IMG/VR virus record: IMGVR_UViG_3300046171_000252
Location: 1-64,000 of that record
Reading direction: 5' to 3' (one strand)
DNA: 64,000 nt
The notes under the pieces were generated by a model. The model had not been told where the DNA came from. It worked only from the letters and a program-made list of their open reading frames with translations, and searched no databases. Both the position numbers and the translations under genes were made by a program. Below are positions 16,307 through 18,850 of this stretch, one piece after another. How positions within the stretch are numbered: position 1 is the stretch's first letter; every line of letters starts with the position of its first letter.

Positions 16307-16335
16307 TTGACTATATATTAAAGAGGGTCTATAAT
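16307..16335 (+). promoter_or_regulatory. Sigma70-type promoter TTGACT-N17-TATAAT
   Basis: Near-perfect consensus just upstream of the riboswitch-like RNA. Confidence 0.8.
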
Positions 16336-16344
16336 AAGACCTGA

Positions 16345-16388
16345 CGTTCATCCCGCTCTAGGGTGGGACGCAAGTAAGTCGCGGAACG
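16345..16388 (+). ncRNA. Glutamine riboswitch-like aptamer 1 (glnA / Downstream-peptide class)
   Basis: CGTTCATCCC-loop-GGGACGCAAGTAAGTCGCGGAACG; P1 CGTTC/GAACG; lies upstream of a DUF4278-like ORF, the known context for these riboswitches. Confidence 0.7.
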
Positions 16389-16392
16389 GAGC

Positions 16393-16574
16393 CGTTCATC
16401 CCATGATTGAATTTCTTTTATACTCATCACTCAGTTGTTCCGATGCCGATGCAATTATGTTTCGGATGAGGAATCACAAGGATCTTGACAATCAAGTTAA
16501 GGTTGAACTAATAGAAGCCGTAAAGGAATCTACACCTGAGTGCTATCCATGGGACGCAAACGACTAAAGGAACG
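16393..16574 (+). ncRNA. Glutamine riboswitch-like aptamer 2 with a 54-aa ORF inside its P2 loop
   Basis: CGTTCATCCCATG ... CATGGGACGCAAACGACTAAAGGAACG reproduces both halves of aptamer 1 about 145 nt apart. Confidence 0.55.
16403..16567 (+). CDS. Small hypothetical protein, 54 aa (MIEFLLY...PWDAND)
   Basis: Manually translated; below the ORF-track cutoff. Confidence 0.6.
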   Translation: MIEFLLYSSLSCSDADAIMFRMRNHKDLDNQVKVELIEAVKESTPECYPWDAND

Positions 16575-16608
16575 GACCTAAAAATCCAACTACTTTAGGA
16601 GTAAACAA

Positions 16609-16776
16609 ATGAACACACTTCAAATGATTAAGAAGCAGATCAACAAAGCATCTGCACTGCATGACGCACAAGTTCTTCACACCTCATATCGTGGTGTTGA
16701 GTATGATACTCGTTGTGTAGAATCAAAAGAAATGCACGGTACATTCTGTTATCGTGGTCATATCTACAACAAGTGA
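16609..16776 (+). CDS. DUF4278-family small protein, 55 aa
   Basis: AGGAG SD; YRGVEY and FCYRGHIY motifs; manually translated. Confidence 0.75.
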   Translation: MNTLQMIKKQINKASALHDAQVLHTSYRGVEYDTRCVESKEMHGTFCYRGHIYNK

Positions 16777-16797
16777 GTCACTTACGTTAAAATTGTT

Positions 16798-16825
16798 AGG
16801 GGGGTTGACTAACCCCCCTTTTTTA
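16798..16825 (+). terminator. Intrinsic terminator
   Basis: AGGGGGGTT-gact-AACCCCCCT followed by a T-run. Confidence 0.85.
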
Positions 16826-16855
16826 TGTAAAATACCTATAATCATATACAATTTT

Positions 16856-17026
16856 ATGGAAAAGGATAGATTAAAACTAATTGTCCGGAATTTAGAATTG
16901 TTAGTCGATGCTCTAAAATCCGAAGTATATTCTGACAGAGAGTTATGTGTTTCCAAACAAGAAAACTTTGATGACCCAGCTTCTAACTATATCATGGACT
17001 ATGACGAAGTTTTTGAGGATGATTGA
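16856..17026 (+). CDS. Conserved cyanophage hypothetical protein
   Basis: MEKDRLKLIVRNLELLVDALKSEVYSD; ATG 16856 lies downstream of the terminator. Confidence 0.7.
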   Translation: MEKDRLKLIVRNLELLVDALKSEVYSDRELCVSKQENFDDPASNYIMDYDEVFEDD

Positions 17027-17187
17027 TGAAAACTAAGCAATTGATTAAAGACCTTAGAAGTGCAATTTCTCAAGATTATTTGTATAATAGTGATGAGCTT
17101 AAATACATGCAAGAGCAACTTGACCAACTGGAACTATCAGTAAAAAGAATTCCAAGAACAAAACCCAAAGGATTTGGTGAAAAATGA
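17026..17187 (+). CDS. Small hypothetical protein, 53 aa (ends KGFGEK)
   Basis: Manually translated; overlaps both neighbours by ATGA-type coupling. Confidence 0.65.
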   Translation: MKTKQLIKDLRSAISQDYLYNSDELKYMQEQLDQLELSVKRIPRTKPKGFGEK

Positions 17188-17819
17188 CTGTTAAACTTAT
17201 AAGTGTCACTCCTGATGCAGAACAAACCATGGCATATATTGCCAGGGTTTCGAATCCATCAAATCAGAATAATGAAAAGTATGCAGGTCTGCTGAAGTAT
17301 TGCATCAAACATAATCATTGGTCGGTATTTGAACAATCTACAATGACTCTGGAGATTGAGACTACTCGTGCCATTGCAGCTCAGATTTTAAGGCATCGTA
17401 GTTTTACATATCAGGAATTTTCACAACGATATGCTGATTCTTCAATGCTGGCAAAGAAAATTGCTTTACCAGAACTACGTCGTCAGGATGATAAGAATCG
17501 TCAAAACTCTATTGACGATCTAGATCCTTTTGAGGTTCAGATTCTAGAGAAACAGATGGCCACTTTGTTTGATTCCGCCATGTCATTGTATCAGCAAATG
17601 CTTGAGCGTGGTGTAGCAAAAGAATGTGCTCGTATGGTGCTTCCATTATGCACACCCACACGAATCTATATGACAGGTTCATGTCGTTCATGGATTCATT
17701 ACATCACCCTGAGGTCCGCACATGGCACTCAGAAAGAACATATGGACATCGCAGAAGCATGTAGAAAAGTCTTCATTGAACAGTTTCCTGCTGTTTCTGA
17801 ATCCCTTGAATGGGTCTAA
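17184..17819 (+). CDS. thyX: FAD-dependent thymidylate synthase ThyX
   Basis: HWSVFE, RHRSFTYQEFSQRY signature, ARMVLP, HGTQKEH. Confidence 0.97.
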   Translation: MTVKLISVTPDAEQTMAYIARVSNPSNQNNEKYAGLLKYCIKHNHWSVFEQSTMTLEIETTRAIAAQILRHRSFTYQEFSQRYADSSMLAKKIALPELRRQDDKNRQNSIDDLDPFEVQILEKQMATLFDSAMSLYQQMLERGVAKECARMVLPLCTPTRIYMTGSCRSWIHYITLRSAHGTQKEHMDIAEACRKVFIEQFPAVSESLEWV

Positions 17820-18094: not shown

Positions 18095-18850
18095 ATGCCT
18101 AGAAGAAAAAAGACTTCAGAAGAATCTATTGGAGTAGGTATGACTTCAATAAGAATGAAAAAGAAGAAACCTTTGAGTGCCAATTATTTGGTTGATATTA
18201 AACCTCTTTCTGACAATCAACAAAGGTTATTTGATTCATATAATAATGACAAACATTTAGTCGCATATGGATGTGCCGGTACAGGTAAGACTTTTATTAC
18301 TCTCTATAATGCATTGAAAGATGTTCTGGACGAGAATACTCCATATGAAAATGTGTATATCGTCAGATCTCTGATTGCCACTCGCGAGATTGGATTTCTG
18401 CCGGGAGATCATGAAGACAAGTCTTCTCTTTATCAGATTCCATACAAATCTATGGTAAAGTATATGTTCCAGATGACATCTGATGTGGATTTTGAAATGC
18501 TGTATGGCAATCTCAAAGCACAGGAGACTATCAAATTTTGGAGCACCTCTTTCCTGAGAGGAACAACTCTTGATAATGCAATCATCATCGTTGATGAATT
18601 CCAAAACTTGAATTTTCATGAACTTGATAGTATAATTACTCGTATTGGTGAAAACAGTAAAATTTGTTTCTGTGGTGATGCCAGACAATCAGATTTGACA
18701 AAAACCAATGATCGTAATGGTATTATGGATTTTATGAGTATTTTGAGAAAGATGCCTTCTTTTGATGTTATTGAATTTCAAATAGAAGACATTGTTCGTT
18801 CAGGTTTAGTTCGAGAATACATCGTCGCAAAAATAGAAGCAGGTTTGTAA
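18095..18850 (+). CDS. phoH: PhoH-family ATPase
   Basis: GCAGTGKT Walker A, IGFLPG, FLRGTT, IIVDEFQN, GDARQSD, IVRSGLV. Confidence 0.96.
   Translation: MPRRKKTSEESIGVGMTSIRMKKKKPLSANYLVDIKPLSDNQQRLFDSYNNDKHLVAYGCAGTGKTFITLYNALKDVLDENTPYENVYIVRSLIATREIGFLPGDHEDKSSLYQIPYKSMVKYMFQMTSDVDFEMLYGNLKAQETIKFWSTSFLRGTTLDNAIIIVDEFQNLNFHELDSIITRIGENSKICFCGDARQSDLTKTNDRNGIMDFMSILRKMPSFDVIEFQIEDIVRSGLVREYIVAKIEAGL

What the first reader, a model, noticed from the sequence alone, without database searches (positions are those of the whole stretch)
16345..16574. Tandem glutamine-riboswitch-like aptamers, the second with a whole ORF nested in its stem-loop
Seen: aptamer 1 is compact (CGTTCATCCC...GGGACGCA...GGAACG). 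The same two halves recur at 16393 and 16548-16574 but enclose a 54-codon ORF. Its ATG is in the 5' strand of P2 (CCCATG pairs with CATGGG), and its last codons and stop (W-D-A-N-D-stop) are the 3' half of the aptamer. Known: glnA and Downstream-peptide RNAs bind glutamine and can occur in tandem. Inference: aptamer folding and translation of the nested ORF are mutually exclusive, so ligand and ribosome traffic could jointly gate the downstream DUF4278 gene. The conserved WDAND end may reflect RNA rather than protein constraint.
Basis: partly seen in the sequence, partly recalled or inferred. Interest (0 to 1): 0.75.

Follow-up and report, generated by a model that had tools for sequence, protein, structure and literature searches.

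The report
Gene nested inside glutamine riboswitch aptamer
In this cyanophage, the second of two glutamine-sensing RNA aptamers has a whole 54-codon protein gene in its hairpin loop, and the gene's last five codons and stop codon are the aptamer's own ligand-binding core, so ribosomes and glutamine must compete for the same RNA.

Summary
The window is from a T4-like cyanomyovirus. Positions 16307-16825 form one small unit: promoter, compact glutamine aptamer (16345-16389), split second aptamer (5' half 16393-16402, 3' half 16550-16575), an SD-sequestering helix, an IF17-like DUF4278 gene and a terminator.

More than 120 related phage contigs carry the same second aptamer as a compact 39-54 nt hairpin. 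Its 3' half is identical to the window's but non-coding there. So WDAND-stop is aptamer sequence overprinted by the ORF.

The ORF (phrog_504) is a real gene. It shows a coding substitution pattern and a GGAG that appears almost only when the ORF is present. It occurs in 311 GenBank cyanophage records.

Both aptamer halves stay invariant across about 208 split loci, including synonymous sites and the non-coding GGAACGG. Native ORF interiors favour long-range closure far more than codon-shuffled ones (0.74 vs 0.30).

The CCCATG/CATGGG extension is not conserved; only UCCCA/UGGGA is. That stem shows wobble changes but no compensatory ones.

The stop codon lies in a helix that covaries with the base next to the downstream SD.

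Gating by ligand and ribosomes follows from the anatomy but is untested. I rate it a new variant of a known riboswitch class.

The parts
16307..16335 (+). Sigma-70-type promoter: TTGACT, 17-nt spacer, TATAAT. The transcript start is inferred near 16342.
   Evidence: The promoter scan gives 11 of 12 matches. The same TATAAT context precedes aptamer 1 in related loci. Metatranscriptome contig depth rises from 0 at 16328-16368; this is weak support.
16345..16389 (+). Aptamer 1, a compact glutamine-riboswitch-like aptamer: CGUUCA, hairpin 16351-16368, CGC, 11-nt linker, GGAACGG.
   Evidence: Rfam RF01704 22.4 bits (E 0.002) and RF01739 22.4 bits (E 0.017), both below gathering. Its hairpin covaries in relatives: UA 33, AU 14, CG 3, GC 3 at the closing pair.
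16388..16391 (+). GGAG, the probable Shine-Dalgarno of the nested ORF. It is made of the last two G of aptamer 1's GGAACGG plus the AG linker, and lies 11 nt before the ATG.
   Evidence: The linker starts with AG in 105 of 108 distinct ORF-bearing contexts but in only 2 of 69 compact contexts. Fisher p = 2e-42, not corrected for relatedness.
16384..16397 (+). Potential inter-aptamer hairpin GAACG-GAGC-CGUUC. It pairs the 3' strand of aptamer 1 with the 5' strand of aptamer 2 and is an alternative to both aptamer folds.
   Evidence: It is present in the minimum-free-energy fold and in the RNAalifold consensus of compact relatives. One contig (L060) has a compensatory G-to-C / C-to-G double change that preserves it.
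16393..16402 (+). 5' half of aptamer 2: CGUUC (pseudoknot/P1 strand), A, and UCCC (5' strand of the hairpin stem).
   Evidence: It is identical to the first 10 nt of aptamer 1. It is invariant in about 208 split loci, apart from C-to-U wobble variants and L060. It pairs long-range in the RNAalifold consensus of 44 diverse split sequences.
16403..16567 (+). Nested protein-coding ORF of 54 aa (phrog_504, T4-GC 430), function unknown. It occupies the loop of aptamer 2's hairpin, and its last five codons and stop codon overlap the aptamer's 3' half.
   Evidence: phrog_504 E 5.7e-28. There are 311 phage records, one copy each. Codon-position entropy in the interior is 1.05 / 0.52 / 1.41 bits, and length changes come in whole codons. 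The AlphaFold model shows two helices (pLDDT 78) with a low-confidence C-terminal tail.
16550..16575 (+). 3' half of aptamer 2: UGGGA (3' strand of the hairpin stem), CGC (linking strand of the binding site), linker AAACGACUAAA, and GGAACGG (pseudoknot/P1 strand).
   Evidence: It is identical, outside the loop, to the compact aptamer of relatives such as L089, which scores 30.9 bits on RF01739 and 26.4 on RF01704. TGGGACGCA and the non-coding AGGAACGG are invariant in split loci. The region is intact and non-coding in S-CAM3.
16560..16602 (+). Helix H: ACGACUAAAG (16560-16569, containing the nested ORF's stop codon at 16565-16567) pairs with CUUUAGGAGU (16593-16602, containing the DUF4278 SD AGGAG at 16597-16601). 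It encloses GGAACGG and a mini-hairpin (GGA 16574-16576 with UCC 16585-16587).
   Evidence: It appears in the minimum-free-energy folds. The middle base of the stop codon covaries with the base before AGG: G-C 34, A-U 19, G-U 10, A-C 0 among 63 distinct contexts. RNAalifold gives AU 35, GC 17, GU 4. The mini-hairpin uses the last two G of GGAACGG.
16609..16776 (+). DUF4278 (IF17-like) gene of 55 aa with two YRG motifs (phrog_545, T4-GC 937). This is the gene the leader regulates.
   Evidence: Pfam PF14105 19.9 bits, below the cut-off. Five of 10 orthologous downstream proteins pass the cut-off at 26-39 bits. phrog_545 E 3.6e-35.
16798..16825 (+). Intrinsic terminator: 9-bp G+C-rich stem followed by a T tract.
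   Evidence: Terminator scan. Metatranscriptome depth falls to 0 after about 16819 in run X15.

Best explanation
What it is: the cyanomyovirus version of a tandem glutamine riboswitch leader in front of an IF17-like (DUF4278) gene. In one widespread variant, a small protein gene sits in the hairpin loop of the second aptamer.

Shown:
- The second aptamer is orthologous to a compact 39-54 nt aptamer in other cyanophages.
- The 54-codon ORF replaces only the loop. It starts directly after the 5' strand of the stem and reads the aptamer's 3' half as W-D-A-N-D-stop.
- Both halves remain under RNA-level purifying selection.
- The ORF interior is arranged so that the halves can still pair.
- The ORF is a genuine coding gene with its own GGAG.
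- The stop codon lies in a covarying helix that sequesters the DUF4278 Shine-Dalgarno.

Inferred mechanism: the aptamer still folds around the gene and senses glutamine, as an ON switch for DUF4278, which is how the family works where it has been tested. The ORF's SD uses the last two G of aptamer 1. Its spacer is aptamer 2's pseudoknot strand, its AUG abuts the stem, and its end is the binding core. So a ribosome starting or finishing on the ORF unfolds the aptamers, and folded glutamine-bound aptamers occlude the ORF's start region.

My preferred reading is reciprocal output. At high glutamine the aptamers fold, the nested ORF goes down and DUF4278 goes up. At low glutamine the ORF is translated, and aptamer 2 is kept from forming. 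The direction of the effect of terminating ribosomes on the DUF4278 SD is not settled: they could couple the two genes or antagonise the switch.
For: Compact orthologues: more than 120 IMG/VR loci have aptamer 1 plus a compact aptamer 2 with the same 3'-half sequence, the same mini-hairpin, the same SD and a DUF4278 gene. Their tandem pair passes Rfam's gathering score at 35.6-43.6 bits. Compact aptamer 2 alone scores 30.9 bits.

RNA-level constraint in split forms:
- In about 208 loci the 5' half, TGGGACGCA and the non-coding AGGAACGG are invariant apart from wobble changes.
- Third-position entropy in the last five codons is 0-0.36 bits, against about 0.9-1.4 bits in the interior.
- S-CAM3 keeps an intact non-coding 3' half 16 nt after its ORF stop.

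Long-range fold:
- It is the only consensus structure of 44 diverse split sequences.
- It is present in the window's minimum-free-energy fold.
- Its pairing probability is 0.74 native against 0.30 with codon-shuffled interiors, and native exceeds the shuffled mean in 29 of 30 loci (first version).

The ORF is coding: phrog_504 match, 311 phage records, codon-position pattern, and the GGAG association.

Helix H covaries.

From the literature:
- Both glutamine riboswitch types act as ON switches for DUF4278 genes (PMC6212724).
- The type 2 aptamer can be assembled from two RNA pieces and still bind glutamine (PMC6698751).
Against: - No compensatory covariation supports the long-range stem in split forms. 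The 3' strand is fixed by the Trp codon, and the 5' strand shows only C-to-U changes.
- The PK strands are invariant and identical in both aptamers, so covariation cannot show which 5' half pairs with which 3' half.
- The 5' half is made about 150 nt before its partner. Ribosomes or the inter-aptamer hairpin could capture it first.
- The window's elements fall below Rfam's gathering scores.
- No ligand-binding, structure-probing or ribosome data exist for the split form.
- The shuffle test uses related sequences and a nearest-neighbour energy model without pseudoknots.
- My pattern search forced R at the stop-codon position of compact forms, which narrows the covariation test.
- The regulatory direction is borrowed from Synechocystis and Prochlorococcus reporters.
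Confidence: 0.6

Rival explanations
1. Relic aptamer. After the ORF arrived, aptamer 2 stopped binding glutamine. Its 5' half now serves only as the anti-P1 partner of aptamer 1 and as the spacer of the ORF's ribosome-binding site. Its 3' half is kept by coding plus helix H. DUF4278 is then expressed by translational coupling to the nested ORF, with aptamer 1 as the only sensor.
For: - There is no compensatory covariation in the long-range stem.
- The inter-aptamer hairpin is in the minimum-free-energy and consensus folds, and L060 preserves it by a double change that mismatches both canonical P1 helices.
- The GGAG SD overlaps aptamer 1.
- The stop codon lies in the helix that hides the downstream SD.
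Against: - G36-C39 of the non-coding GGAACGG, C17 (third base of the Asp codon) and the A that follows CGC (third base of the Ala codon) have no role in coding, helix H or the mini-hairpin, yet are invariant in about 208 loci.
- S-CAM3 keeps UGGGACGCA although it is non-coding there.
- Native ORF interiors favour closure of the stem much more than shuffled ones.
Confidence: 0.2
2. Crossed or nested topology. The functional ligand-binding fold pairs the 5' half of aptamer 1 with the 3' half at 16550-16575. The inner halves form the inter-aptamer hairpin, so there is one large aptamer rather than two.
For: Rfam's gathering-level hits in compact relatives are single 86-101 nt alignments that use the first 5' half and the second 3' half. 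In L060 only this combination keeps all pairs standard.
Against: Each unit has its own covarying hairpin, its own CGC and its own GGAACGG, and each aligns on its own to the Rfam models. L060 is a single contig. The spanning Rfam alignment may just be the local-alignment route to a higher score.
Confidence: 0.1
3. The 'ORF' is not translated. It is a long variable RNA insert in the hairpin loop that happens to be open.
For: Its function is unknown and there are no informative homologues or fold matches. There is no direct translation evidence.
Against: - The substitution pattern is that of a coding region: position 3 > position 1 > position 2.
- ATG, Cys12, Glu35, Cys47 and Trp50 are invariant, and indels come in whole codons.
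- GGAG appears almost only when the ORF is present.
- There is no conserved interior RNA structure.
Confidence: 0.04

Closest known systems
Glutamine riboswitches type 1 (glnA RNA, RF01739) and type 2 (Downstream-peptide, RF01704) upstream of gifB/IF17-like DUF4278 genes in cyanobacteria (PMC2864571, PMC6212724, PMC6698751)
   Same: The core is the same: CGUUCA, a hairpin, CGC, a linker and GGAACGG. The downstream gene is also a DUF4278 gene. Tandem arrangement is known for glnA RNAs. A helix flanks GGAACGG, as P2 does in type 2.
   Different: Both window aptamers score below Rfam's gathering cut-offs. Aptamer 1 lacks the type 1 P3/E-loop consensus. A mini-hairpin separates GGAACGG from the 3' strand of the flanking helix. 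The second aptamer's loop is a 148-nt stretch of coding sequence.
Compact tandem glutamine aptamers of other cyanomyoviruses (for example S-PM2, ACG-2014f and more than 120 IMG/VR contigs)
   Same: They are orthologous: same promoter context, same aptamer 1, the same two halves of aptamer 2, the same helix H, SD and DUF4278 gene.
   Different: Their second hairpin has a 4-12 nt loop and covaries freely. The linker after aptamer 1 is mostly AU, GUA or AUUU rather than AG. The 3' half is non-coding.
Translated uORF inside the metE B12 riboswitch aptamer of Mycobacterium tuberculosis (PMC11260477)
   Same: An ORF lies within an aptamer, so translation and aptamer folding interfere. In that case, uORF translation was shown to change expression of the downstream gene.
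   Different: That ORF is a short, poorly conserved uORF in a large aptamer. Here a conserved 54-aa protein gene about four times longer than the aptamer fills one loop and shares five codons and its stop codon with the ligand-binding core. Nothing here has been tested experimentally.
Leader ORFs in ligand-sensing leaders such as mgtL in the Salmonella mgtA Mg2+ leader, and ORFs housed in peripheral loops of group I/II introns (from my own knowledge, not checked here)
   Same: Ribosome position on an embedded ORF selects between alternative RNA folds (mgtL). A structured RNA tolerates a whole gene in a peripheral loop (introns).
   Different: mgtL is a sensor peptide, not a conserved protein, and it is not inside a hairpin loop of the aptamer. 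Intron ORFs are not read through catalytic-core nucleotides as a rule.

Membership tests
Glutamine riboswitch type 1 (glnA RNA, RF01739) | Closing helix CGUUC/GAACG plus a conserved A before the hairpin | tested here: met
   Both units have CGUUCA and GGAACGG. For the split unit this pairing is the RNAalifold consensus of 44 homologues, and all of them are invariant.
Glutamine riboswitch type 1 (glnA RNA, RF01739) | Hairpin stem directly after CGUUCA, supported by covariation | tested here: inconclusive
   Aptamer 1 and the compact orthologues of aptamer 2 covary. In the split form, UCCCA/UGGGA shows only four G-U wobble variants and no double changes.
Glutamine riboswitch type 1 (glnA RNA, RF01739) | E-loop/P3 three-way-junction consensus (CGGAAGUA ... 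GAAGGAACG) | tested here: not met
   The alignment to the model shows CGCAAGUA, a 4-nt stretch in place of the 10-nt P3 region, and G-CGGAACG in aptamer 1. Aptamer 2 has CGCAA plus a 6-nt stretch and AAAGGAACG.
Glutamine riboswitch type 1 (glnA RNA, RF01739) | Rfam gathering score (35 bits) | tested here: not met
   The window has no hit at gathering, and aptamer 1 scores 22.4 bits. Compact relatives reach 35.6-43.6 bits only as one alignment that spans both units. Compact aptamer 2 alone scores 30.9 bits.
Glutamine-II riboswitch (Downstream-peptide, RF01704) | Linking strand CGC, with C19 able to pair with G41, and GGAACGG lying in the loop of a 3' helix (pseudoknot) | tested here: met
   CGC at 16555-16557 and GGAACGG at 16569-16575 are enclosed by covarying helix H. 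This is a sequence-level test only. A mini-hairpin is inserted in a way the family consensus does not show.
Glutamine-II riboswitch (Downstream-peptide, RF01704) | A33:G42 pair (99.5% conserved according to PMC6698751) | tested here: not met
   In the window's aptamer 2 the A is present two bases before GGAACGG, but the base after GGAACGG is A (16576). Many relatives have G there.
Glutamine-II riboswitch (Downstream-peptide, RF01704) | Rfam gathering score (33 bits) | tested here: not met
   The window's aptamer 1 scores 22.4 bits. Compact aptamer 2 of L089 scores 26.4 bits. One relative, L088, reaches 34.0 bits.
Glutamine riboswitches (both types) | Located in the 5' leader of a DUF4278 (IF17 / IF17-like) gene | tested here: met
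   The downstream ORF at 16609-16776 matches PF14105 at 19.9 bits, below the cut-off, and 5 of 10 orthologues pass it. The association is described in PMC6212724.
Glutamine riboswitches (both types) | Selective binding of L-glutamine and a glutamine-dependent change in expression | not testable with these tools
   This needs in-line probing or ITC and reporter assays.
Riboswitch with a translated ORF inside the aptamer (M. tuberculosis metE type) | The ORF lies inside the aptamer, and its translation alters the switch output | tested here: inconclusive
   The position inside the aptamer is shown. Coding status is supported by substitution pattern and SD association. Translation and its effect on the switch were not tested.

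The most novel reading that the evidence does not exclude
A conserved protein gene has been overprinted onto a riboswitch, so that one RNA stretch is at once ligand-binding core, C-terminal codons, stop codon and anti-SD strand. Glutamine binding and ribosome traffic compete for it. This would give a two-output switch that expresses the nested protein and the IF17-like protein reciprocally according to the host's glutamine level during infection.
Probability: 0.3. Interest if true: 0.8.

Novelty: new variant of a known kind. Interest (0 to 1): 0.64.

Why it matters
Riboswitch aptamers are normally compact and non-coding. Here a natural, widespread and strongly conserved case shows an aptamer that appears to tolerate a whole gene in one loop. 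Five codons and a stop codon are dictated by RNA function rather than protein function.

- **Test system.** It offers a way to study long-range riboswitch folding in competition with translation. Natural compact controls (S-PM2, ACG-2014f) and split versions (S-RIM2, S-RIM8, Syn1) exist in cultured phages.
- **Annotation.** Rfam-type searches miss the split aptamer. Gene callers sometimes extend the ORF through aptamer 1.
- **Phage biology.** It suggests that cyanophages tune an inhibitor-like protein of host glutamine synthetase, plus a second unknown small protein, to the host's nitrogen status.

Tried and rejected
- **Rfam on the window.** At gathering threshold it found nothing. The permissive search found only aptamer 1.
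- **Covariance search with a long loop insert.** I expected the 183-nt element to exceed the hit length of a ~50-nt model, and a model trained on split sequences would match by ORF homology alone. I used a gapped pattern scan with a reversed control and identity to compact orthologues instead.
- **Function of the nested protein.** Pfam, PHROGs, the 5.8-billion-protein search, the ESM Atlas, an AlphaFold model and Foldseek against viral structures returned only its own uncharacterised family.
- **Cellular examples.** A scan of 185,579 species' genomes for split aptamers with 135-165 nt loops gave 40 hits. Only 3 are real, and all 3 are cyanophage contigs binned into MAGs. The rest are G+C-rich chance matches. 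A Leptolyngbya hit lies antisense to minD.
- **Transcript ends.** The metatranscriptome contigs are about 150 nt long and carry adaptor-like ends, so they show presence and a depth step but not precise ends. The 'joints' that skip the ORF are compact relatives in the same samples, not RNA processing.
- **Literature.** Full-text searches found no description of an ORF in a glutamine aptamer. The Ames & Breaker 2011 paper is not held, so I cannot exclude a mention there.
- **First structure job.** I reran it without them.
- **Conserved interior RNA structure.** I rejected the idea that the ORF interior carries a conserved RNA structure; none appears in the consensus fold.

Full report
**Context.** The window is part of a 207.6-kb virus record. 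Neighbouring genes (ThyX-like 17184-17819, PhoH-like 18095-18850) mark it as a T4-like cyanomyovirus. So do 437 matching Synechococcus and Prochlorococcus phage records.

Positions 16307-16825 form a self-contained unit:
- a near-consensus promoter, TTGACT-17-TATAAT;
- the two aptamer-like elements;
- a 55-aa gene;
- a strong intrinsic terminator.

In marine metatranscriptomes, contig depth is zero or low on both sides and rises over roughly 16330-16800. This is consistent with that unit. It is weak evidence, because the contigs are read-sized and DNA carry-over cannot be excluded.

**The observation.**
- The 3'-half pattern GGGACGCAA-N9-GGAACGG occurs twice in the window (16365-16389 and 16551-16575), against 0.02 expected.
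- CGTTCATCCC occurs exactly only at 16345 and 16393.
- A gapped pattern scan finds just these two elements in the whole virus genome, and none with the reversed control.
- The ORF at 16403-16567 has 54 codons.
- Rfam recognises only the compact element, and below its cut-offs.

**What decides the identity of the split element.** In them the architecture is:
- promoter;
- aptamer 1;
- a 2-4 nt linker;
- a compact aptamer 2 (for example CGUUCAUCCC-UUCG-GGGACGCAAACGACURAAGGAACGG);
- a mini-hairpin and an SD;
- a DUF4278 gene.

Outside the loop, the window's aptamer 2 is letter-for-letter the compact aptamer of loci such as L089. That aptamer alone scores 30.9 bits on RF01739 and 26.4 bits on RF01704. 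The compact tandem pairs pass Rfam's gathering score at 35.6-43.6 bits, as single alignments spanning both units. In the compact forms the hairpin of aptamer 2 covaries freely: CG 36, GC 13, UA 5, AU 2 at one pair.

So the split element is an orthologue of a bona fide member of the glutamine-aptamer group. Its hairpin loop has been replaced by 148 nt. The sequence read as W-D-A-N-D-stop is present without any ORF in the compact forms.

**The nested ORF is a real gene.**
- It matches phrog_504 (E 5.7e-28) and is annotated T4-GC 430 in GenBank records.
- It occurs once each in 311 phage records, down to 41% identity. These include S-RIM2, Syn1, P-RSM1, S-BM1 and the distant S-TIM5.
- Over 163 distinct sequences, interior codon-position entropies are 1.05 / 0.52 / 1.41 bits.
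- Met1, Cys12, Glu35, Cys47 and Trp50 are invariant, and length changes come in whole codons.
- The linker after aptamer 1 begins with AG, which creates GGAG 10-11 nt before the ATG. This holds in 105 of 108 distinct ORF-bearing contexts but in only 2 of 69 compact ones (Fisher p = 2e-42, not corrected for relatedness). It looks like an SD acquired together with the ORF.
- The predicted protein is a two-helix hairpin (pLDDT 78) with a poorly defined C-terminal tail. No search gave a functional lead.

**Are the two halves still an aptamer?** Five lines say yes.
1. In about 208 split loci (47 distinct end combinations), the 5' half is CGUUCAUCCC throughout. The exceptions are UCUC and UCCU variants, which keep pairing to GGG as G-U, and one contig (L060). 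UGGGACGCA and the non-coding AGGAACGG are invariant, with three single-lineage exceptions.
2. Synonymous sites are frozen. GAC and GCA are each found in 54 of 55 distinct sequences, and the one exception is S-CAM3 (point 3). Nearby codons such as TGC/TGT split 31:24. These frozen bases (C17 and the A after CGC), and G36-C39 of GGAACGG, have no role in coding, in helix H or in the mini-hairpin. In the crystal structures they belong to the binding core (PMC6698751).
3. In S-CAM3 the ORF ends at its own TAG, and the intact 3' half follows 16 nt later as non-coding RNA.
4. RNAalifold on 44 diverse split sequences returns the long-range CGUUC/GAACG and UCCCA/UGGGA helices. Apart from a 2-bp local pair (CG/CG) in the 3' half, these are the only consensus structure, and nothing is conserved inside the ORF.
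5. In partition-function folds of whole leaders, the long-range stem has a mean probability of 0.74 with native ORF interiors. With codon-shuffled interiors it is 0.30, with the two end codons on each side held fixed. Native exceeds the shuffled mean in 29 of 30 diverse loci (the first version is).

Against this, there is no compensatory double change in the long-range stem. The aptamer's tolerance of being interrupted is plausible. The hairpin loop is distal to the binding site, and the type 2 aptamer has been reconstituted from two strands with glutamine binding retained (PMC6698751).

ACGACURAAG (16560-16569) pairs with CUUYAGGAGU (16593-16602). The middle base of the nested stop codon pairs with the base before the AGG of the DUF4278 SD, and the two covary. 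Counts are G-C 34, A-U 19, G-U 10 and A-C 0 in 63 distinct contexts; RNAalifold gives AU 35, GC 17, GU 4. One caveat applies: my pattern required R at that position in compact forms.

The helix encloses GGAACGG, like P2 of type 2 riboswitches. It is separated from GGAACGG by a covarying mini-hairpin whose 5' strand uses the last two G of GGAACGG. The helix also shares A-A-G with the aptamer core. Ligand-induced pseudoknot formation must therefore remodel both the helix and the mini-hairpin. This fits the ON behaviour shown for both riboswitch types in reporters (PMC6212724), but that link is an inference.

**Mechanism.** The following is shown:
- The ORF's SD is built from aptamer 1's terminal G-G.
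- Its spacer is aptamer 2's pseudoknot strand, and its AUG abuts (in this window, lies inside) the long-range stem.
- Its last codons are the binding core.
- Its stop codon is in the anti-SD helix.

It follows that a ribosome initiating or terminating on the ORF and a folded aptamer cannot coexist on one RNA. Which way this drives DUF4278 is not known. I favour reciprocal expression: glutamine-bound aptamers occlude the ORF's start and open the DUF4278 SD, while ORF translation at low glutamine prevents aptamer 2 from forming. The alternative is coupling, in which terminating ribosomes melt helix H and expose the SD 30 nt downstream.

The rivals are a relic second aptamer, a crossed topology suggested by L060 and by Rfam's spanning alignments, and an untranslated insert. 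They are weighed in their own sections.

**Distribution and origin.**
- On a tree of the short DUF4278 gene, compact and split states change at least 21 times among 203 tips, against 58 for shuffled labels. The states are clustered but interspersed. Either the loop content is exchanged by recombination between the conserved flanks, or the ORF has been gained or lost repeatedly. The tree is too short to say which.
- S-PM2 and ACG-2014f have the compact form.
- No cellular genome holds the split form. The only true hits among 185,579 species' genomes are cyanophage contigs binned into MAGs.

**Known or new.**
- Tandem glnA RNAs, their presence in cyanophages and the DUF4278 link are known (PMC2864571, PMC6212724, PMC9964418).
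- An ORF translated inside an aptamer has a precedent in the M. tuberculosis metE B12 riboswitch (PMC11260477).
- I found no description of a conserved protein gene in the loop of a glutamine aptamer, or of codons overprinted on its binding core. One key paper could not be read.

I therefore class it as a new variant of a known kind, with interest 0.64.

Noticed in passing
L060:1440-1500 (IMG/VR contig, split form): Aptamer 1's GGAACG is GCAACG, and aptamer 2's CGTTC is CGTTG. This complementary double change preserves the inter-aptamer hairpin but mismatches both canonical P1 helices. Only the pairing of the first 5' half with the last 3' half stays fully standard.
   Followed up: partly
L203:492-720 (Synechococcus phage S-CAM3): The nested ORF ends ...WYWSDHE at its own TAG, and the intact aptamer 3' half follows 16 nt later. 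The ORF's last 18 nt look like a diverged duplicate of the aptamer's 3' half (about 10 of 18 identical), which would separate coding from RNA function.
   Followed up: partly
Related loci, e.g. L062:1668-1725, L100, L141, L103; not in the window: In many relatives the mini-hairpin after GGAACGG carries a 25-30 nt structured insert, in two types: ACGGAUCC-hairpin-GAGAAGGUU and CUCGGAUCACCC-loop-GGGUUAAAGGAG. The inner hairpin covaries. There is no Rfam match.
   Followed up: partly
window 16346-16351 and 16394-16399 versus 16609-16614: GUUCAU in both 5' halves is the exact complement of AUGAAC, the start of the DUF4278 gene. The minimum-free-energy fold pairs the first copy with the start codon. 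This could be part of the OFF state, but relatives whose gene starts AUGGCA lack it.
   Followed up: no
window 16322-16402 and proteins P0001, P0012: Many database entries call this gene as 75-81 aa. In relatives the reading frame is open from an ATG that lies inside the promoter and runs through aptamer 1, which then reads ...GWDASKSRNG. This is an annotation artefact. The window itself has no start codon there.
   Followed up: yes
L082:8336-8422 and other compact relatives: Rfam's gathering-level glutamine-riboswitch hits in cyanophages are single alignments that span both tandem units: the 5' half of the first and the 3' half of the second. Each unit alone is below threshold. Automated annotation therefore undercounts aptamers and misses split ones entirely.
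   Followed up: yes
window 16805-16833: A second promoter-like site (TTGACT-17-TAAAAT, 10 of 12 matches) overlaps the terminator of the riboswitch unit. It precedes a 56-aa ORF (16856-17026, phrog_878).
   Followed up: no
L097:1351-1540 and L082:1021-1116: Related phage contigs carry manA RNA (173 bits) and PhotoRC-II RNA (57 bits) near the riboswitch locus. The window has no Rfam hit at gathering threshold anywhere in its 64 kb.
   Followed up: no
L375, L380, L394 (genome contigs): Contigs assigned to a Verrucomicrobiales MAG, an 'uncultured bacterium' MAG and a Euryarchaeota (TMED129) MAG carry the cyanophage split aptamer and its ORF. They are almost certainly mis-binned cyanophage DNA.
   Followed up: partly
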